Of a stretch of 64,000 bases of DNA, positions 11,790-64,000 are shown piece by piece. Below the pieces are notes generated by a model. It was not told the DNA's origin. It did no database searches and saw nothing but the letters and a program-made list of their open reading frames with translations. Numbering within the stretch: the first letter of the stretch is position 1; each line of letters begins with the position of its first letter. The stretch is from Octopus bimaculoides (lineage: Eukaryota): assembly GCF_001194135.2 (NCBI RefSeq), contig NC_069000.1:15352379-15416378 (forward strand), given 5' to 3'. Made by a program: the position numbers and the translations under genes.

Positions 11790-12200
11790 CATATGTAGTG
11801 CATTCTCTCGTCGTGAACGACAGACGAGCGTTCAGTAAAATAAAGCAGTAATCATGTTCTATGGACTCGAATGTGTCCTTTGAGGCCTGCTGGTGCCTTG
11901 CAAACCTTTTAGCAAATGGAACCAGTTGAGGACTCAGTTTGCTCGAGTGTTTGTGGATCATTTACTATGCGTTTTCTTGAGTGGGCGGCAAGGCCTGCTT
12001 TGCTTCGTGTCACAAAACCACGATGACAAGTAAGCTTTCCATATAGAGGAGCAGTGTTTTGCCAGCGTTCCTTCATGCTAGCACAAAGTTAGTCCCGATG
12101 CTGGAGTCGACTTTGCTCAAATCTTTGAAGTGAAGAGAAGTAGGCCTGGTGTCAGGGCCTGCATTCTGATGCTTATTTTCCCAGGAAAAAAAGGGAATGT
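11790..12200 (-). mobile_element. RTE-clade LINE 3' end with C-terminal CCHH zinc knuckle and short tail
   Basis: Minus-strand RPTSLHFKDLSK...SIC*KVCKAPAGLKGHIRVHRT*, then a short 3' tail running into an (AC)/(ATAC) microsatellite. Confidence 0.7.
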
Positions 12201-13149
12201 TGNNNNNNNNNNNNNNNNNNNNNNNNNNNNNNNNNNNNNNNNNNNNNNNNNNNNNNNNNNNNNNNNNNNNNNNNNNNNNNNNNNNNNNNNNNNNNNNNNN
12301 NNNNNNNNNNNNNNNNNNNNNNNNNNNNNNNNNNNNNNNNNNNNNNNNNNNNNNNNNNNNNNNNNNNNNNNNNNNNNNNNNNNNNNNNNNNNNNNNNNNN
12401 NNNNNNNNNNNNNNNNNNNNNNNNNNNNNNNNNNNNNNNNNNNNNNNNNNNNNNNNNNNNNNNNNNNNNNNNNNNNNNNNNNNNNNNNNNNNNNNNNNNN
12501 NNNNNNNNNNNNNNNNNNNNNNNNNNNNNNNNNNNNNNNNNNNNNNNNNNNNNNNNNNNNNNNNNNNNNNNNNNNNNNNNNNNNNNNNNNNNNNNNNNNN
12601 NNNNNNNNNNNNNNNNNNNNNNNNNNNNNNNNNNNNNNNNNNNNNNNNNNNNNNNNNNNNNNNNNNNNNNNNNNNNNNNNNNNNNNNNNNNNNNNNNNNN
12701 NNNNNNNNNNNNNNNNNNNNNNNNNNNNNNNNNNNNNNNNNNNNNNNNNNNNNNNNNNNNNNNNNNNNNNNNNNNNNNNNNNNNNNNNNNNNNNNNNNNN
12801 NNNNNNNNNNNNNNNNNNNNNNNNNNNNNNNNNNNNNNNNNNNNNNNNNNNNNNNNNNNNNNNNNNNNNNNNNNNNNNNNNNNNNNNNNNNNNNNNNNNN
12901 NNNNNNNNNNNNNNNNNNNNNNNNNNNNNNNNNNNNNNNNNNNNNNNNNNNNNNNNNNNNNNNNNNNNNNNNNNNNNNNNNNNNNNNNNNNNNNNNNNNN
13001 NNNNNNNNNNNNNNNNNNNNNNNNNNNNNNNNNNNNNNNNNNNNNNNNNNNNNNNNNNNNNNNNNNNNNNNNNNNNNNNNNNNNNNNNNNNNNNNNNNNN
13101 NNNNNNNNNNNNNNNNNNNNNNNNNTATATACATATATATATCAACAAA

Positions 13150-13355
13150 GCAGCGGTATAGGGCAAGACTCTGTCCAATGCACTTTTCCTGAAACTGTCT
13201 GATAGTAAAGATACAATCAACCGTGCTCCTGGAGAAGCGAAAACCACATTGAGACTCAGACACTATATTTGGAACTATGAAAAAATTTAAACGTTCTAAT
13301 AGAGTACAGGCAAGTACATTTCCAACTATAGAAAAAAAAGCGAAATTCCACACCT
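13150..13355 (-). mobile_element. RTE-clade LINE reverse-transcriptase fragment
   Basis: (GISL)FSIVGNVLACTLLERL...IVSESQCGFRFSRSTVDCIFTIRQFQEKCIGQSLALYRCFVD matches the LLSIVGKVLARILLNRL...ESQCGFR...RSTVDMIF...RQLQEKC...FVD block of RTE/BovB-like RTs. Confidence 0.88.
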
Positions 13356-39103: not shown

Positions 39104-42100
39104 TAGTCTGTTATTTTTTTTTTTTATTATGACAAAAAAAATGATAATAAATACACAGCAGCTATTTATCAGAGACACTGAAAACATAACCGAACATTAT
39201 GTCTTGCTTATCTCATCTGAAAAAATGTGCTAGCGGTCAGTTGAATTACAATACAGAAGTGTGTCTGAAAATTTGTCAGTAGTCAAGAAAATGGCTGAAG
39301 AGTGATGATGAGCGAGTTGGTGATAATGATGTGATTGGCAATAGTGAAAGACGACAAGATATTCTATGTATTCAGCATAAAAAAAAAAAAGAGAAGTTGA
39401 TAAGTGCATGAAGTGGAAACAGGAAGATACAATGATAACAGTGATTGAGGATAAGACATGGATGTAATATTTTCATATTTTGGGGAAAAACGGTGGATGT
39501 GAGTTAAATTTCAGCTCAAGCGAACTTCGTTGATAAGCTACATGCATGTATGTAAACCAATGAGTGTGTGTATATATATATTAAACTGTTACAGGAAGCG
39601 GAGTGATAGTTTTGGCTAGCTTTTTTCATCAGACAATATTATACTTGGGTTCCAAAAGCTAGCAGGCGGAAACTTTGGAATCACTATCCTCCTTCTTTTA
39701 AAAATTTTATAAACACGTTCTCTTCTAAAAAGTACTGAATAATTCTTCAGTTTAATGTTAAATTGTTTCCATATTACAACTCGACATAAAAAAAAAAACT
39801 CCTACATTATATATACACACACACACACTAACATGCACGTATAGCTGATGTCTCTCTAATCTAAACTACATAAAGCAAACTGAACAAGAAGCTGAATTAA
39901 TAGTCATTATATCAACAAGAGGACGGCATGAAGTTGTGATCAGTAACTATATATATACATATATATATATATAGATAGATCTTGTGATCAGATATAAGAT
40001 GAAAGGAAACAGAGGGAGTCGTTTGAAGTTTAGACAGTAAAGATAAAGTTTGTGTCTTGTTCTTCCTTCATCGAAGTAGTGTAGGTGTATATAGACCAAT
40101 ATAAAAGTTAAAATGCTTGATTAGAAAAGAGCAGGGGGGGGGGAATGTTGGAACTATGAAAATGATATGGAATGGATCGGTTTACATTTGTTTTGTTTTT
40201 GTTTTGGAAAAAGAAAAAAACTTTTTCCTTTTTATAAAATTGCGAACAGTAAAAATGTTAGTTTGATGAAGTTTTTTTTGATAGAGAAATTATTACTACA
40301 TAGAGATGGTCAAGAAACAAGTTTTGTTTTGTTTATTTTTTTTGTATAAATATCAAAACTGGACACTGTTTTCTTTTCAGAATGGTAAACATTTTTGGAA
40401 ACAGATAAAGTTAAAAAAAAAAATTGTTAAAAGGTCCACTTTTTAAAATAAATTTTCATTGAATGCCTTTTCTCATGCCAAGTTATTTAAAATTTACCAA
40501 ACAATACATATGTAGCAGTCATAATAACTGACTAGCTTATTGTGTTTTTAAATGTTAAATAAACAATTATTATTCAAATGTATGAATATATAAAAAAAAT
40601 GATTCAGGAATTTCACATTAATATGTAAAAAGCAAAACGAAACTGGTTTGGTAAAAAATAACAATTCAATTTGCCATCTATAGTTACTGTGAGCCCACAA
40701 GGAAGAGGGAGAGGAGTACCACATACCAAAATGCTTTTTAAACTTTCAGCAATTCCTTATAGACAATAAACATGCAATAATAATACTAATGATTTCAAAG
40801 TTTGGCACAAGGCCAGGGGGAGAGAGAGCAAGTTGATTACATTGACCCCTAGTGTGCAACTGGTGCTTATTTTATTAACTCTGAAAGGCAAAGTCAACCT
40901 GGGCAGAATGTAAAGTCGGAAGAAATGCTGCAAAGCAATTTTCCTGACACGCTAATAATTCTGCCAGCTCACCACCTTAATAATAGTAATAATAATAATA
41001 ATAATAGTAAAGTGTGACAAATAATTGTCAACAAGGCAAGAAATTGGTTTAAACAATGGTTTTACTGAGTTTTAGGCACACCGTAAATCTGGGCGGATTA
41101 TATATTCTAAATATACCTTTAAGACAACATACCATCCATTAGAAAATTTAGGCATTTGCGAAATGTTAATATTAACATATTGGCGAAATATTCTATTATT
41201 AAAAGAAAGGTCACATGGTTTAAAATTTAGTGAAATTGGACGCTTCAAGTTTTTTTGTTTTTAGGTAATTGTCTATTTTCTTTAGCTTATTATTATTATT
41301 TCCTTCTTAGTCATCATTAATAAATCTTTAAATTATTGAAAAAACAAAATATCCCATAAGAATATAAATAATATTCAGGTCTCAGGGACCATTGTGGCAG
41401 AGAGTACAGTATTATAATAACAGCCCTATTAAACAATTATCTTGGCAAGACACAATAGTTATGTATGTGTGTATGTATATATATATATTTTCTCACACAC
41501 TCGTCTCTACACATGAATACATATTCACATGCAGCTTAATGTACATACCTATATGCATATATATATCTGCATATCAAACTGCATGTGTATACACACACAC
41601 ATATACATATGTACTCATCTCTCTCTGTCATATATATAAATGCATATAAATATATATACACACACACACACACAGGTACCTATACATATAAATATATGTA
41701 TACAAATATATGGACATGCATCTATACACACACACAAACAAACACAGAGAGAGACTGGGGAGGGGAAGAGAAAGTGTTCTTGCTATGAGACAGTCCCCAT
41801 AACAGATGTGTATCATCTACTTGGCTTTGGCTCCAAAAGGACGTGAGAAAGTAGGGCTAAAACGTGAAATAATGTCATTGCAAACGGATGGAGGATGGAA
41901 AGTAGCCAGAAACATATAATGTGCTAAATATTTCAAGTCTGAAAAGGCTATTTATACTTATCGAAAGAAATGTAATTTTTTTTCCCACATTTAACTGAAA
42001 CTTTAGATATTATATATACATATATATATATAGTAACCAATAATTGACTACAAATATTGAATCAAAGATAAAGACAAGATTTTTGTTATTGTTGATGACA

Positions 42101-44348: not shown

Positions 44349-45520
44349 TTACATTTTCTGACAAATTTCCAAAGCTCTGTGGCGAACCTGTGAGGAATCA
44401 AGGAGATCATATTCAAGGTTGAAGTAAGTAGATGGCTTCTGTTCAAATGTCATAACAACTGAAGATCCCCGGCAGAAATCTGCAATGTCTGAAGGCCTCT
44501 CCTCATCAAGTTCAGACAGAGGTGTACCGTTTGGAGAATGATTCCCAGAACGTTTTTGCAGCAAGTGATGTTGTTCTCCTTCACAACTATCATAGGAAAA
44601 ATCAAGTATGTCACCTGAAGAATTTGAACTAACACTGCCAATACTGAGCCTCTTCCGAGCATCACTGCTCATTGAAGTATAACCATTATGGAGACAAAGT
44701 CCAGATTTTTTCAGAATGCCACGCCGTCGGACACAATCAGTTCGAACAGAGTTGACCACTGTTGATCCTGTGTTATAATCCACATGACTATAACTACTTT
44801 CTTTTATTGTTAAAAAGCTATCGGCATCACTATTGGCAGGAATGTCAGAGTTTGGTTCTGTTTTGTCAGACAACATAGAGCCTATAGTTGGGGGACTACT
44901 GCTACAGTTTAAACTGAGGCTGTTGGTGGGAGGGGAACTGTGTTTTGGCAAGCTTTTTTGGAATGATGAGCATGTATTATTAAATCCATTGCTGTTGGGA
45001 TTACTGTTTTCCTTACATGAGCCTTCTATCACACTGTAGCTGGTTGTACTTTTATCTTCTCTCATACAGCTACCTGTTTGCTTTAGAATACTCCGGACAG
45101 GCTTTTGATCCAGATTAACACGTTGGTAAAATTCACTGGAAGCACCATTGCCACTGACAGAAACATTTTGTCGATGAGTATGTCTAGGAGAATGATATTT
45201 TATATCAGGGATAACTGTACTGTCCAATGTTGACAATTTGTCTCCATCATGCTGCTCTTGTCTTTGTCTTGACAAAGTTTTACTGGGAAAGTTCCCTCTT
45301 CTTCGCAGTTCATTTATATCAATTTCACCATCACTATCAGAAGATAAGCTAGATCGGTCACAGATATGAATTGGAGCCTGTAACCAGGGTCCAGGATATG
45401 GTTCATTGTTAGGTGTGAAGTTGTATCCCATGTTGACCCACCAATGATGGACAACTTTCTCCACATTGGCTCTCCTCTCAGGATTCACAGTGAGTAGATG
45501 TCGTATAAGGCCCGCAGCTT
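44349..45520 (-). CDS. NUAK: NUAK-family kinase terminal coding exon (subdomain XI plus long Ser-rich tail), TAA stop at 44351-44349
   Basis: ttctttccag|AA GCT GCG GGC = (E)AAGLIRHLLTVNPERRANVEKVVHHWWVNMGY..., open to ...ALEICQKM*. It contains SILK and GILK motifs. The first 23 residues of the ORF-track protein are intronic. Confidence 0.95.
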
Positions 45521-46129
45521 CTGGAAAGAAGAGAAAATGTAGTAAGAATGTAACAAAGACAAAAGCATTTATCAAATAATTCAATTTCATTATTTAAAGA
45601 CACAACACGTGAAACATGTGCTCATAAAACTTCTGATCAAGATCATTCTATTTTTAAGGTGTTTCCAGAATTTGTTAAATGTTGTATATAGATGCTTTAC
45701 ATTCCATTTCACTCTACTGATCAGACTATCAAATGTGATAAACTGCTGGCTGTAAGGTGTCTCCTCACACTGTTGCAGCCTTCTAATGATGTCATCCTGA
45801 GGGTAGGCAGGCAGGTAGGCTAACATTCCCCCCTGAAAGTAATACCAGTCTGTCATAGGGTTACTCGTAAAATAAAGTGTTTAGCTCAAGAACAAAATGC
45901 ACTGCTCAATCTGGGAGCGGAAATCACAATCATAAGATTGTGAAGGCAACGCCCTAGCCACTAAACCATGCACCTGCAGTACATTCCAGATATTGAACAT
46001 CAAATTAATAAGCATTAAGAAAGAATGCTTATTAAAGTGCAAATTGTTGGAAAGTGGAAAATGATGTGGTTTGGTCACGTAACATAACTCCATGACACCA
46101 TACTTCTAGTCCAATGATGATATATTTAA

Positions 46130-59802: not shown

Positions 59803-59923
59803 CTTCTCGAACATTGATTATATTGGGATGACTTAGAATTGATAAGATTTTAATCTCCCGACGGATCTTATTGAGGTCTTGTTTGTGCCGAATTTTGTTG
59901 AGCTTTATGTATTTGATGGCAAC
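59803..59923 (-). CDS. NUAK: NUAK-family kinase, internal coding exon (subdomains II-IV), 121 bp; not in ORF track
   Basis: Reverse complement reads cttatag|GTT GCC ATC AAA...CGA GAA G|gtaggt = VAIKYIKLNKIRHKQDLNKIRREIKILSILSHPNIINVRE+G. It contains the VAIK lysine and the alphaC glutamate (RREI). The phase-1 end joins the next exon (G|TG = Val). Confidence 0.93.
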
Positions 59924-60358
59924 CTATAAGAGAAATAAAAACAAAAATATTTCAGTGTTTTTCAAAGAAAGAAAGAAAGGAAGGAAGAAACAAGGAAAAA
60001 GCCTTGAGAGCCAGAATGATAAACTCAACGGGATGGTTGTGGATGTGTGTATGTATGTATATATATATATANNNNNNNNNNNNNNNNNNNNNNNNNNNNN
60101 NNNNNNNNNNNNNNNNNNNNNNNNNNNNNNNNNNNNNNNNNNNNNNNNNNNNNNNNNNNNNNNNNNNNNNNNNNNNNNNNNNNNNNNNNNNNNNNNNNNN
60201 NNNNNNNNNNNNNNNNNNNNNNNNNNNNNNNNNNNNNNNNNNNNNNNNNNNNNNNNNNNNNNNNNNNNNNNNNNNNNNNNNNNNNNNNNNNNNNNNNNNN
60301 NNNNNNNNNNNNNNNNNNNNNNNNNNNNNNNNNNNNNNNNNNNNNNNNNNNNNNNNNN

Positions 60359-60394
<36 letters not shown>

Positions 60395-60518
60395 ACTTGG
60401 GGATGGTCATATTGCCAGTTTAGCCAATAAAAACACAAGCACTGTATATTTGGTGTTAATTTGCTTCAGCTTTATATTTCAACACGATTTCACATAAAAA
60501 ATCTTGCAAAACAAATAT

Positions 60519-60595
<77 letters not shown>

Positions 60596-60837
60596 CATAC
60601 ACACACTCATGTTTTGAGTTCTATTTTCCTGTTTACATTGTCAAACCTGTATATCTATAGGAAAAGTTATTTCCTAATGATATGGACAGGAGAGGAAATA
60701 AAAGTCATGTTGTGAATTCCAGTCACCAGAATTTTGTTGACTTCATACAGCATTTGCAAAGATGAATATATTCATGATTACACCAATACATACATACATA
60801 TACACACACTATGATTGAAAAACAACAATAATAGGAC

Positions 60838-61125
60838 ATCATCATCATCATCTTCGTTTAATGTCCGCTTTCCATGCTAGCATGGGTTGGACGATTTGAC
60901 TGAGGACTGGTGAACCAGATGGCTACACCAGGCACCAATCTGATTTGGCAGAGTTTCTACAGCTGGATGCCCTTCCTAGCGCCAACCACTCCGAGAGTGT
61001 AGTGGATGCTTTTACGTGCCACCGGCATGAAGGCCAGTCAGGTGGAACTGGCAACAGCCACGCTTGAAATGGTGTATTTTATGTGCCACCTACACAGGAG
61101 CCAATCCAGCGGCACTGGCAACGAT
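60838..61125. mobile_element. Dispersed repeat family E (retroelement-tail-like, (CAT)n end)
   Basis: catcatc...gtttaatgtccgctttccatgctagcatgggttggac...ctggatgcccttcct...gccaaccac. Related copies at about 38690-38910 (opposite), 51800-51910, 52205-52260, 57900-58080 and 62600-63030. Confidence 0.7.
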
Positions 61126-61509
61126 GTGACAGCTAAAATGGCTTTGATCATAGGCATGTTCGACCACTGTTGACCCAGGGTTAGATAACATCTCTTATTT
61201 AAATAGGATGGAAGAGAACAGATTTTGATAGACTTGTTGAGTTTATCTGAGAATTTGCAAAAAAATGTTTTTAAATAAAAATGATATTTATTATGACTAA
61301 TAAAAAATAACTCAAAAATAACAATGCATTCAAATAAAATATTTTGGTTCTCCACCTTCTTATGACGTATTAATTTTAGTAAAAATGTTATATCTACTTT
61401 TAGTATACTATATCTACTATTACTATACTATGTCTACACTGCATCGCTCTCATTTCTTACTGCAAATCTCCTCATACAGATTTAATAATCCTTAACTTCT
61501 ACTATTACC

Positions 61510-61558
61510 GTCTCCGATGAAGGGATACATTGAATTTTCCCTGAAACAGCTGTGAGAC
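61510..61558 (+). ncRNA. Minimal hammerhead-like motif (variant core, G at cleavage position)
   Basis: gtct-CCGATGA-AGGGA...TCCCT-GAAA-cagctg-TG-agac; ACAGCTGT is a perfect palindrome. Confidence 0.5.
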
Positions 61559-63061
61559 ATTCTAAATAAAATATAAATTTATTTATGCCATTGGTCTCTT
61601 TATCTCATTCTTTTTATATATACACACGCTAATACATGACCCATGTTATATTCCCCATTCATGTTACAACCACATCTGGGGCAAAACTAGTCGGTATACA
61701 GCACTTATTCGGTATTACCTGTAACATTCGGGTCTGGTTGACTCCATTACCCATCATAACCTTTATATCTACTATTATTATTATTGTTGTTATTATTATT
61801 ATTATTATTACTATTTTATCATTTTTATTTGTTTCGGCCACATTTTCATTAAACAGGACCAAAATACAATTTAGTGTGCCATTTGTATCAACCAGCTGTG
61901 GTCTGGTAATGTCATCAATAAACATGGATGCAGGCTGAAAAAGTTATGCCCATACACACTCACAAATACAAAGACAATGGGTTTTTTGCTAGAGGTCAAA
62001 GTGCAGAGACAGACAACAAAGACAACTATGAATATCAAAAGCTATGGTCAATAACCTTGATGATATGGATAACAGTAAGTATTAATATGGATGATGACAA
62101 TAATGATGATGTAATATTGTTGTTAAAACAAACAGTGAAACCCCTGTAGCTTAACAGTTATTAAAAACATGTCAGCTGCAAAGTCAACAAAACCTAATAA
62201 AAAAAAAGTGAAAAAAAAAAGCAAAAAAAAAACATGAGAACGAAGGAAATTAATGCCCAAAGAACTCAGTTATTTTTGAAACTACAATGATGAAGATGAG
62301 AACAGAAAAATATTTAAAAACCATGTATAAAAGTCAAAAATATGAATTTTGTACGACTGTATGTGAGTATATATATTGATTAGCAGTTTTGAGATATACG
62401 AAATATTAAACAAGAAATTCCTGACAAATAAATGTCATCATCTCTTTTGCTTTTCTAGGCAAAATGTTTTCCACCCTATAATTTAAAGTACTAACTCATA
62501 GTTGTAAAATAAGTAGATTTATATTTCAACTTTCCTTAAATGGATCAATGAGTAAATTTTTTTTGCCATTTCAGATCTTTTATTTAATATAAAAATATGT
62601 ATAACATCATTATAGTCATTTAACGTCCACCTTCCATACTAGCATAGGTGGGACAACAATTTATATAATATATTAATTGTTGATATATATATATATACAT
62701 ACATTACATACACACCATCATCATCATTTAACATTCATATTCTTGTCCACCCTGCTGGGTGGTCGGTGTTAGAAAGGGCATCCAGCTGTAAAAACCATGC
62801 CAAAACAGACACAAAAGTCTGGTGCAGCAGGCCCCTGCCAAGTCAGTTCCAGCCAAACTGTCCAACCCATGCCAGCATGGAAGGCAGACATTAAATGGTA
62901 ATGATGATGATGATTCCATGTTAGCACAGATTTGACAGGCTCCAATGAGCTAGAGGGTTGCATTGGGTTCCTGTGTCTACTATGGCAAGGTTTCTATAGC
63001 TGGATGCTTTTCCAAATGTCAACCAATTTACAATGGTTTTGTGTGGGACCAGCACTACCGT

Positions 63062-63156
63062 GTTTCATGTCCATAAAGCGCTTAACTTTACAGCATTTCT
63101 TGAGACCCTGATGTTGAAGAAATGCTGTAAAGTTAAGCACTTTATAGACATGAAAC
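63062..63156 (-). other. Inverted repeat / RNA hairpin: 40-bp arms, 15-nt loop
   Basis: Arms 63062-63101 and 63117-63156 pair at 38 of 40 positions. The two C/A mismatches (63072/63146 and 63079/63139) are G-U pairs on the minus strand. Confidence 0.9.
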
Positions 63157-63258
63157 CCAGGGTAACCCCACAGACCGGCCATATCTATCTTTATATATAC
63201 ACTCTACTGTTCTATAACTTAGAGTATGCTTCTTTTTTGGATTTATGTTTTACTGACA

Positions 63259-63301
<43 letters not shown>

Positions 63302-64000
63302 GGTCTGCCAAAACTAGGCCGTAACAGCTGTAAGATTAAACTTCTGTTCATCCTCTAATTCCTTATGTACTTTGTACTTCTATATGTAAACCATGTTGGC
63401 AAAATAACATAGTCTGCCATGGACACCTGTGCTTTGGTTCTTTNNNNNNNNNNNNNNNNNNNNNNNNNNNNNNNNNNNNNNNNNNNNNNNNNNNNNNNNN
63501 NNNNNNNNNNNNNNNNNNNNNNNNNNNNNNNNNNNNNNNNNNNNNNNNNNNNNNNNNNNNNNNNNNNNNNNNNNNNNNNNNNNNNNNNNNNNNNNNNNNN
63601 NNNNNNNNNNNNNNNNNNNNNNNNNNNNNNNNNNNNNNNNNNNNNNNNNNNNNNNNNNNNNNNNNNNNNNNNNNNNNNNNNNNNNNNNNNNNNNNNNNNN
63701 NNNNNNNNNNNNNNNNNNNNNNNNNNNNNNNNNNNNNNNNNNNNNNNNNNNNNNNNNNNNNNNNNNNNNNNNNNNNNNNNNNNNNNNNNNNNNNNNNNNN
63801 NNNNNNNNNNNNNNNNNNNNNNNNNNNNNNNNNNNNNNNNNNNNNNNNNNNNNNNNTATATAATGTGTGTGTGCTTGCATACATGCATATATTCACTCAC
63901 AAGCAGGTGGTTAAATAATATCTATAGAACCAGAAATAAATGGGTAGAAGGTAAGAATGGAAACCCAACATAAGGTGATTGAAAGGCAATACCTAAAAAG

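What the first reader, a model, noticed from the sequence alone, without database searches (positions are those of the whole stretch)
63035..63176. Near-perfect 40-bp hairpin that pairs fully only on the NUAK-sense strand: candidate novel intronic miRNA or ADAR substrate
Seen: 38 of 40 Watson-Crick pairs and a 15-nt loop. Both mismatches are C/A on plus and G-U on minus, the NUAK strand. Weaker outer pairing exists (TACC/GGTA, TGTGGG/CCCACA). No second copy occurs in the window. The minus 5' arm reads UAAAGUGCUUAACUUUACAGCA from 63144, 12 nt above the stem base. Established: Drosha cuts about one helical turn above the basal junction, AAAGUGC is the vertebrate miR-17/20 seed, and coleoids have many lineage-specific miRNAs and extensive A-to-I editing. 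Inference: pri-miRNA, endo-siRNA hairpin or editing substrate. Caveats: I found no CNNC at the canonical distance, one mismatch is explained by CpG decay, and the seed match may be chance.
Basis: partly seen in the sequence, partly recalled or inferred. Interest (0 to 1): 0.7.

Follow-up and report, generated by a model that had tools for sequence, protein, structure and literature searches.

The report
Neutrally drifting intronic hairpin in octopus NUAK1
The 40-bp hairpin is real and sits in intron 1 of the Octopus bimaculoides NUAK1 gene, but comparison with two other Octopus species shows it changing at least as fast as the surrounding intron, so it looks like an ordinary old palindromic relic that may be RNA-edited in passing, not a conserved microRNA.

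Summary
The arms lie at 63062-63101 and 63117-63156, with 38 of 40 Watson-Crick pairs and a 15-nt loop. Both mismatches are G·U on the minus (NUAK1-sense) strand. The fold is far beyond chance (z = -12.7).

The window is Octopus bimaculoides. The hairpin lies in NUAK1 intron 1, 3.1 kb upstream of exon 2.

I fetched the orthologous loci of O. sinensis and O. vulgaris. Both carry the hairpin at the syntenic site, so it predates that split.

It is not conserved like a microRNA:
- The 80 stem bases carry 13 substitutions against 6.1 expected from the intron (P = 0.01).
- No pair shows a compensatory change.
- The proposed mature 22-mer differs at two positions between species.
- The "miR-17 seed" AAAGUGC exists only in O. 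bimaculoides. It arose by CpG-to-TpG decay of an ancestral AAAGCGC; the other two species have AAAGGGC.

No Rfam family reaches threshold, and no published octopus miRNA seed that I could search matches.

The excess of substitutions that keep sense-strand pairing (8 of 13) is only marginal once the ascertained window events are removed (P = 0.10).

The same locus holds several other unique-sequence near-perfect palindromes, some species-specific.

Best reading: a neutral palindromic relic, passively transcribed and probably a promiscuous ADAR substrate. Small-RNA and editing data were not available.

The parts
63117..63156 (-). 5' arm of the hairpin in the NUAK1-sense RNA (GUUUCAUGUCUAUAAAGUGCUUAACUUUACAGCAUUUCUU). 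It contains the proposed 5p 22-mer (63144-63123).
63102..63116 (-). 15-nt apical loop. It differs at 5 of 15 positions between O. bimaculoides and O. sinensis.
63062..63101 (-). 3' arm of the hairpin in the NUAK1-sense RNA. It retains the ancestral GCGC.
63035..63061 (-). Outer, imperfectly paired 3' flank of the 142-nt palindromic module.
   Evidence: MFE structure; consensus structure.
63157..63176 (-). Outer, imperfectly paired 5' flank of the module. It is preceded on the sense strand by TA-rich sequence (ATATAAAGATAGATAT).
62948..63032 (.). Truncated copy of an abundant SINE-like interspersed repeat. Its end abuts the hairpin module within 3 nt.
   Evidence: Repeat-depth map against 252 kb of Octopus loci.
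62748..62914 (.). Second copy of the same SINE-like repeat in the opposite orientation. With 62972-63025 it forms a weaker 54-nt, 74% inverted repeat.
63259..63300 (.). (AT)n microsatellite about 85 nt upstream of the hairpin on the sense strand.
59804..59923 (-). NUAK1 exon 2 (aa 64-103), the nearest exon. The hairpin lies 3.1 kb upstream of it in intron 1.
   Evidence: tblastn of O. sinensis NUAK1.

Best explanation
The feature is a single-locus palindromic relic in intron 1 of Octopus bimaculoides NUAK1. It has a 142-nt module with a 40-bp near-perfect core. It arose before O. bimaculoides split from the O. vulgaris/O. sinensis lineage and has drifted without detectable constraint since. 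Its origin was probably a palindromic insertion, or fold-back synthesis, beside TA-rich microsatellite DNA, like the younger palindromes in the same locus. Shown: the hairpin exists, its position and orientation, its presence in three species, its substitution pattern, and the lack of other copies in the DNA searched. Inferred: whenever NUAK1 pre-mRNA is made, the arms, only 15 nt apart, snap into a 40-44 bp A/U-rich duplex. That duplex is the kind of substrate ADAR edits promiscuously, and octopus introns are known to be edited at hairpins. Dicer/Drosha might occasionally nibble such a duplex, but there is no sign of a selected small RNA. The resemblance to the miR-17 seed is a coincidence produced by one CpG decay in one species.
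For: Identity and context: the window is 100% identical to O. bimaculoides GCA_001194135.2. The NUAK1 exon maps place the hairpin in intron 1. Orthologous hairpins lie at L001 45561-45702 (O. sinensis) and L002 45299-45440 (O. vulgaris) inside colinear alignments. No constraint: intron substitution divergence is 6.8% / 6.7% / 2.05% for the three species pairs, whereas the 142-nt module shows 17 / 19 / 12 differences (12% / 13.4% / 8.5%). That puts it in the top 3-4% of 325 intronic windows. The 80 stem bases carry 13 substitutions against 6.1 expected (P = 0.01). None of the 60 consensus pairs has a compensatory double change. Pairing erodes to 33 WC + 6 GU + 1 mismatch in O. sinensis and 32 WC + 3 GU + 5 mismatches in O. 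vulgaris. The proposed 5p arm reads UAAAGUGCUUAAC in O. bimaculoides and UAAAGGGCUUAGC in the other two, with AAAGCGC implied as ancestral by the partner arm. No Rfam family reaches its gathering score (best is mir-4796, 39.9 against 90 bits, a generic perfect-hairpin match) and mir-17 is not hit at all. The parts of the Zolotarov et al. 2022 supplements held here contain neither the sequences nor the 8-mer seed sites. Ordinary for the locus: at least six other unique-sequence near-perfect palindromes occur in the same gene region. One is an O. sinensis-specific ~212-bp insertion into a (TA)n tract with a clean empty site in O. vulgaris. Editing plausibility: PMC9699675 reports that most octopus A-to-I editing is in introns and 3'UTRs, consistent with hairpins there.
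Against: Eight of 13 stem substitutions are sense-strand C>T or A>G, which keep a G·U pair in the NUAK1-sense RNA. The intron spectrum predicts 31% (P = 0.024). All three species fold better on the sense strand: -74.9 vs -69.2, -78.2 vs -53.8 and -55.4 vs -38.8 kcal/mol. This could mean selection on RNA structure. With only about 7% neutral divergence, the power to detect conservation of a 22-mer is modest: 1.5 differences are expected and 2 observed. Young miRNAs can evolve quickly. No expression, small-RNA or editing data could be consulted. Genome-wide copy number and the insertion mechanism are unknown, and no target-site duplication was recognisable.
Confidence: 0.65

Rival explanations
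1. It is a young, Octopus-genus-restricted miRNA or miRNA-like small-RNA locus, processed from the NUAK1 intron, still evolving quickly and lowly expressed.
For: The hairpin has far more than 16 paired bases, a loop of at least 8 nt and sense orientation in a Pol II intron. It has persisted since a split that PMC9699675 puts at about 50 My. That paper also says the octopus miRNA count is probably an underestimate, and 35 families are Octopus-restricted. Palindromic-element hairpins have become miRNAs before (MADE1 to mir-548, PMC1784062).
Against: Seeds of both candidate arms differ within the genus. The substitution rate exceeds the intron background and there is no covariation. The helix is 40-44 bp contiguous with further outer pairing, longer than the ~35-bp Drosha substrate, and has no clear single-stranded basal junction. 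No CNNC or apical UGU lies at the canonical positions. There is no match in Rfam or in the searchable octopus miRNA seed tables.
Confidence: 0.12
2. It is a structure-selected dsRNA element of the NUAK1 pre-mRNA, for example an ADAR-dependent regulator of splicing or transcript fate, or an ADAR sink. Selection acts on sense-strand pairing, not on sequence.
For: There is an excess of wobble-preserving substitutions on the sense strand (8 of 13, P = 0.024). Sense-strand folding is better in all three species. O. sinensis keeps -78 kcal/mol despite seven non-Watson-Crick pairs.
Against: After dropping the two O. bimaculoides events that caused the hairpin to be picked, the excess is 6 of 11 (P = 0.10), or 6 of 8 transitions (P = 0.16). 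O. vulgaris has five outright mismatches, and all four of its lineage-specific stem changes break pairs. There are no compensatory changes. Other intronic palindromes in the locus show no clear strand bias (24 vs 18). The hairpin is 3.1 kb from the nearest splice site.
Confidence: 0.08
3. It is one copy of a multi-copy hairpin MITE family, a palindromic DNA-transposon derivative like MADE1, and its properties are those of the family, not of this locus.
For: The architecture is MADE1-like: near-perfect ~40-bp inverted arms around a short spacer (PMC1784062). It lies in TA-rich DNA next to other interspersed repeats. A structurally similar palindrome in the same intron is a recent insertion flanked by TA.
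Against: No second copy was found by BLAST or by a covariance model in 316 kb (about 90 kb of unique locus in three species). No predicted protein fragment in 5.8 billion shares words with its translation. No target-site duplication is recognisable at either plausible boundary. The sample could only detect families above roughly 30,000 copies, so this rival is weakly tested.
Confidence: 0.15

Closest known systems
Palindromic MITE hairpins such as human MADE1 (source of the hsa-mir-548 family; PMC1784062)
   Same: It has two near-perfect ~37-40-bp inverted arms around a short spacer, folds into a long perfect hairpin when transcribed, often lies in introns, and resembles a miRNA precursor.
   Different: MADE1 has thousands of copies and TA target-site duplications. 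Here no second copy and no duplication were found in the DNA available, and production of small RNAs is untested.
Intronic inverted-repeat ADAR substrates (clustered or hyper-editing in transcribed repeats, PMC5850803; octopus intron and 3'UTR hairpins, PMC9699675)
   Same: It is an intramolecular duplex of 40 bp or more inside a pre-mRNA intron of an animal with very active ADARs. No sequence conservation is required or expected.
   Different: Classical cases are pairs of inverted dispersed repeats (Alu, SINE). Here the arms are unique sequence separated by 15 nt. Editing itself was not observed.
Octopus-restricted novel miRNA families (Zolotarov et al. 2022, PMC9699675; MirGeneDB)
   Same: It is a lineage-restricted hairpin shared by O. 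bimaculoides and O. vulgaris.
   Different: Annotated families were required to be found in both species and were compared with emphasis on seed regions. This hairpin's candidate seeds differ between the species, and none matches the seed-site tables I could search.
MIR-17 family (seed AAAGUGC)
   Same: The O. bimaculoides 5' arm contains AAAGUGCUUA, identical to miR-17-5p positions 2-11 (own knowledge of the miR-17 sequence).
   Different: The motif is absent from O. sinensis and O. vulgaris (AAAGGGC). It derives from ancestral AAAGCGC by one CpG decay. No Rfam mir-17 hit appears even at E = 10. To my knowledge the family is vertebrate-specific.

Membership tests
Canonical animal miRNA (MirGeneDB / Ambros criteria) | Hairpin with at least 16 complementary bases between the arms and a loop of at least 8 nt | tested here: met
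   40 of 40 pairs on the sense strand and a 15-nt loop.
Canonical animal miRNA (MirGeneDB / Ambros criteria) | Drosha/DGCR8 substrate geometry: ~35-bp stem between a single-stranded basal junction and the apical loop | tested here: inconclusive
   The contiguous helix is 40 bp (44 in O. sinensis), with further outer pairing to about 55 bp and no clear basal single-stranded junction.
Canonical animal miRNA (MirGeneDB / Ambros criteria) | Processing motifs (basal UG, apical UGU/GUG, CNNC 16-18 nt 3' of the cut); helpful but not obligatory | tested here: not met
UG is off by one, there is no apical UGU, and the nearest CNNC is about 26 nt away.
Canonical animal miRNA (MirGeneDB / Ambros criteria) | Mature and seed sequence conserved among species that share the locus | tested here: not met
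   The 5p seed is AAAGUGC against AAAGGGC. The 3p seed is UGUAAAG against UGAAAAG in O. vulgaris. The stem rate is 13 substitutions against 6.1 expected.
Canonical animal miRNA (MirGeneDB / Ambros criteria) | Reads of 20-26 nt from both arms with 2-nt 3' offsets and homogeneous 5' ends | not testable with these tools
   No read data are accessible. The held supplements of PMC9699675 contain neither the sequence nor its seed sites, but those files are truncated.
MIR-17 family | Homologous precursor with a conserved AAAGUGC seed | tested here: not met
   There is no Rfam mir-17 hit at E up to 10. The seed is present in one of three species and derives from CpG decay.
Promiscuous ADAR substrate (intronic dsRNA) | Intramolecular duplex of at least 20-30 bp within a transcribed region, on the transcribed strand | tested here: met
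   A 40-bp duplex on the NUAK1-sense strand inside intron 1. Transcription is inferred from the gene annotation.
Promiscuous ADAR substrate (intronic dsRNA) | Clustered A-to-G mismatches between RNA and DNA | not testable with these tools
   No RNA-seq access.
Hairpin MITE (MADE1-like) | Many dispersed copies | tested here: inconclusive
   No extra copies in 316 kb by BLAST and covariance model, but that sample only detects families above about 30,000 copies.
Hairpin MITE (MADE1-like) | Target-site duplication and an empty site in a relative | tested here: not met
   No duplication is recognisable at the module ends. All three available species carry the hairpin, so no empty site is available.
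hpRNA / endo-siRNA hairpin (Drosophila type) | Long inverted repeat (hundreds of bp) giving phased 21-nt siRNAs | tested here: not met
   The core duplex is only 40 bp.
Mirtron | Hairpin ends coincide with splice donor and acceptor | tested here: not met
   The hairpin is 3.1 kb from exon 2 and about 30 kb from exon 1, and there is no AG at its 3' end.

The most novel reading that the evidence does not exclude
The hairpin is a genus-restricted RNA element under selection for sense-strand pairing, not for sequence. The G·U-biased substitutions would be the trace of that selection. It would either feed a young small-RNA locus or act as an ADAR-dependent cis-regulator of NUAK1 pre-mRNA. More broadly, octopus introns would continuously generate unique-sequence palindromes beside (TA)n tracts, supplying raw material for the lineage's unusual expansion of ADAR substrates and new miRNAs.
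Probability: 0.1. Interest if true: 0.45.

Novelty: new member of a known kind. Interest (0 to 1): 0.15.

Why it matters
As it stands this is an ordinary case: one more intronic palindrome in a repeat-rich cephalopod genome. Its main use is cautionary. A near-perfect hairpin with a famous seed can be fully explained by neutral decay, because the seed was created by a single CpG transition in one species. If small-RNA or editing data later showed activity, the locus would be a dated example (older than the O. bimaculoides / O. vulgaris split) of how a palindromic insertion becomes a miRNA or an ADAR substrate. That bears on the open question, raised in PMC9699675, of where the many new octopus miRNAs came from.

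Tried and rejected
1. Rfam evalue search of 60000-64000 and gathering search of the whole window: only sub-threshold generic perfect-hairpin or microsatellite hits.
2. Full-text search of 8.3 million papers for the arm sequences: none.
3. Zolotarov et al. 2022 supplements searched for the sequences and for 10 possible 8-mer seed sites of both arms: none. The miRNA FASTA archive is not held and two tables are truncated.
4. Exact look-up of the 94-aa ORF that spans the hairpin, and a word-based search of its translation against 5.8 billion predicted proteins, as a proxy for copies in unannotated assemblies: nothing.
5. Covariance model of the three orthologues searched over 316 kb of Octopus DNA: only the orthologues.
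6. One metagenome scan with a 21-mer of the conserved apical stem: seven marine contigs, none with the hairpin, so these are chance matches.
7. The first look-up of O. sinensis NUAK1 isoform X2 failed. The longest isoforms worked.
8. I tried to define empty sites in O. bimaculoides for two O. sinensis/O. vulgaris palindromes. The alignments were confounded by larger indels.
9. Considered and rejected: mirtron (no splice sites), hpRNA (too short), and part of the adjacent SINE (dozens of SINE copies lack it).
10. Transcription-coupled mutation bias cannot explain the G·U excess: polarised intron substitutions are symmetric, 195 vs 187.

Full report
**1. Observation**

- The sequence at 63035-63176 contains a 40-nt inverted repeat (63062-63101 and 63117-63156), 95% complementary, separated by 15 nt.
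- On the minus strand all 40 positions pair: 38 Watson-Crick and 2 G·U. On the plus strand the same two positions are C/A mismatches.
- As RNA, the 142-nt module folds to -74.9 kcal/mol on the minus strand and -69.2 kcal/mol on the plus strand. Both are more than 12 standard deviations below dinucleotide shuffles.

**2. Context**

- A 413-aa open frame at 44349-45590 (minus strand) is the last exon of NUAK1. Its best database match is O. sinensis NUAK1 at 95% identity.
- Mapping that protein onto the window gives exons at 59923-59804, 48608-48456, 47918-47847, 47395-47261, 47000-46866 and 45518-44352 on the minus strand. Exon 1 is absent from the window.
- Via the cluster members I fetched the whole gene with introns from three assemblies:
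  - L001, O. sinensis.
  - L002, O. vulgaris.
  - L003, O. bimaculoides GCA_001194135.2.
- The window is 100% identical to L003 over 1,944 bp, so the source is O. bimaculoides.
- In L003, intron 1 runs from 10193 to 44120 and the hairpin is at 40868-41009. That is 30.7 kb downstream of exon 1 and 3.1 kb upstream of exon 2, on the transcribed strand.

**3. Orthologues and rate of change**

- The hairpin is present at the colinear position in O. sinensis (L001 45561-45702) and O. vulgaris (L002 45299-45440). It therefore predates a split that PMC9699675 puts at about 50 My.
- A three-way alignment covers 20,336 intron-1 sites. Substitution divergence is 6.8% (bimaculoides-sinensis), 6.7% (bimaculoides-vulgaris) and 2.05% (sinensis-vulgaris).
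- The 142-nt module aligns without gaps and shows 17, 19 and 12 differences for those pairs. That is about twice the background. It falls in the top 4% (sinensis-vulgaris differences) and top 3% (tree length) of 325 intronic windows of the same size.
- I polarised changes using the partner arm. The 80 stem bases carry 13 substitutions against 6.1 expected (P = 0.01). The excess is in the two terminal branches.
- By the same logic the core was a perfect, or 39 of 40, palindrome at the time of the species split.
- Pairing has since eroded:
  - O. bimaculoides: 38 WC + 2 GU.
  - O. sinensis: 33 WC + 6 GU + 1 mismatch.
  - O. vulgaris: 32 WC + 3 GU + 5 mismatches.
- RNAalifold finds no pair, out of 60, with a compensatory double change.
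- At the low neutral rate of these genomes, a 50-My-old palindrome is expected to remain about 93% paired. Persistence therefore needs no selection.

**4. Strand asymmetry**

- Eight of the 13 stem substitutions are sense-strand C>T or A>G, which turn a Watson-Crick pair into G·U on the NUAK1-sense RNA. Two are the complementary transitions and three are transversions.
- Consequently the sense strand folds better in all three species.
- Polarised substitutions in the introns are symmetric (195 vs 187 transitions, 238 transversions). A general transcription-coupled bias therefore does not explain the excess.
- Against that spectrum, 8 of 13 has P = 0.024.
- The two O. bimaculoides events are the reason the hairpin was picked. 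Without them the figures are 6 of 11 (P = 0.10) and 6 of 8 transitions (P = 0.16).
- All four O. vulgaris-specific stem changes break pairs.
- Other palindromes in the same introns show 24 sense-type against 18 antisense-type wobble mismatches.
- I regard the asymmetry as a weak lead, not as evidence of function.

**5. MicroRNA tests**

- No Rfam family reaches its gathering score anywhere in the window. The sub-threshold hits at the hairpin (mir-4796, mir-569, mir-203) are matches of any perfect hairpin to perfect-hairpin models, and mir-17 is not among them.
- The proposed 5p arm differs at two of 22 positions between O. bimaculoides and the other two species. One of these is in the seed: AAAGUGC against AAAGGGC.
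- The partner arm shows the ancestor was AAAGCGC. The 'miR-17 seed' is therefore a single CpG-to-TpG change private to O. bimaculoides.
- The candidate 3p seed also differs in O. vulgaris.
- The helix is longer (40-44 bp contiguous, about 55 bp with outer pairs) than the ~35-bp Drosha substrate, and the usual flanking motifs are not in register.
- The arm sequences do not occur in the full text of the paper library. Neither they nor ten possible 8-mer seed sites occur in the held supplements of the octopus miRNA study. Those files are incomplete, so this is a weak negative.

**6. Copy number and origin**

- BLAST and a covariance model built from the three orthologues find nothing but the orthologues in 316 kb.
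- A translation-based search of 5.8 billion predicted proteins and an exact ORF look-up find nothing.
- A metagenome scan gave only chance 21-mer matches.
- This excludes a very abundant family but not a family of a few thousand copies.
- The module abuts a truncated SINE-like repeat on one side (62948-63032) and TA-rich sequence on the other. No target-site duplication is recognisable.

**7. The hairpin is not alone**

Scanning the three loci for palindromic self-alignments shows two classes.
- Head-to-head pairs of the abundant SINE.
- At least six unique-sequence near-perfect palindromes, with stems of 25-85 bp and loops of 4-15 nt. Most lie directly next to (TA)n microsatellites, and none has a second copy in the sample.
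  - One of them (L001 24503-24620; 52-bp arms, 14-nt loop) is part of a ~212-bp insertion into a (TA)n tract. It is present in O. sinensis and cleanly absent from O. vulgaris.
  - Others are shared by O. sinensis and O. vulgaris but were not found in O. bimaculoides.

Such hairpins are therefore born continually in this lineage. The window hairpin is simply the oldest one in this gene.

**8. Interpretation**

- The evidence fits a neutral palindromic relic that is transcribed passively as part of NUAK1 intron 1.
- Its arms are 15 nt apart and would form a 40-44 bp A/U-rich duplex co-transcriptionally. From established ADAR biochemistry (own knowledge), that is long enough for promiscuous editing.
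- PMC9699675 reports that most octopus editing lies in introns and 3'UTRs, consistent with hairpins there. PMC5850803 describes clustered editing in transcribed repeats as the general metazoan pattern.
- Editing of this hairpin is therefore likely but unobserved, and nothing suggests it matters to the animal.
- A young miRNA, a structure-selected regulatory duplex, or membership of a moderate-copy MITE family cannot be excluded with the tools at hand. They are listed as rivals with the data that would decide.

**9. Caveats**

- Only three closely related species were available, so the power to see weak constraint is limited.
- The excess of changes in O. sinensis and O. vulgaris could in part reflect assembly errors at a palindrome.
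- No expression data were available.

Noticed in passing
L001 24480-24691 (O. sinensis NUAK1 intron 1); empty site at about L002 24451 (O. vulgaris): A ~212-bp O. sinensis-specific insertion into a (TA)n tract. It carries a 52-bp-arm, 96% complementary hairpin with a 14-nt loop plus a 70-nt non-palindromic tail. The palindrome is bounded by TA on both sides and has no other copy in 316 kb.
   Followed up: partly
L001 31724-31904 (= L002 31505-31685); L001 33038-33180 (= L002 32759-32901); L001 2016-2071; L001 60741-60812; L001 11231-11387: Further unique-sequence near-perfect palindromes with stems of 25-85 bp. Several directly abut (TA)n microsatellites, and none was found in the O. bimaculoides locus. 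This suggests an ongoing process (palindromic transposons or fold-back repair at TA repeats) that creates hairpins in octopus non-coding DNA.
   Followed up: partly
window 62760-62813 and 62972-63025: Two copies of an abundant SINE-like repeat in opposite orientation form a 54-nt, 74% complementary inverted repeat 158 nt apart, right next to the hairpin. It is a second, weaker potential dsRNA in the same intron.
   Followed up: partly
L003 36239-36677 and L002 88274-88634: Long (360-440 nt) head-to-head SINE pairs with about 80% arm complementarity, predicted to fold at -280 kcal/mol or so. They are probably stronger ADAR substrates than the reported hairpin.
   Followed up: no
L003 40763-41009 (window about 63035-63281): Locally elevated substitution rate. 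The 105 nt upstream of the hairpin also shows 7 sinensis-vulgaris differences in 102 aligned sites, against a 2% background. The fast evolution is therefore not confined to the palindrome.
   Followed up: partly
window 12073-13353 (minus strand, interrupted by an N gap): An open frame with a reverse-transcriptase-like motif (…SESQCGFRFSRSTVDCIFTIRQFQEK…), probably a LINE remnant downstream of NUAK1. The identification is from memory of RT motifs only.
   Followed up: no
window 60515-60621 and 63250-63310: Sub-threshold Rfam hits to mir-297, mir-568 and mir-1277 are (TA)n/(TG)n microsatellites, not miRNA genes.
   Followed up: yes
window 44352-45518 (NUAK1 last exon): The O. bimaculoides protein lacks a 7-aa segment (NPLENYS) present in O. 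sinensis NUAK1. The C-terminal region is 95% identical, whereas the kinase-domain exons are 100% identical.
   Followed up: no
whole window: There are 16 runs of N (3,892 bases in total), and the sequence is identical to the chromosome-level O. bimaculoides assembly where they overlap. The window carries scaffold gaps, including one at 63444-63856 just upstream of the hairpin.
   Followed up: yes
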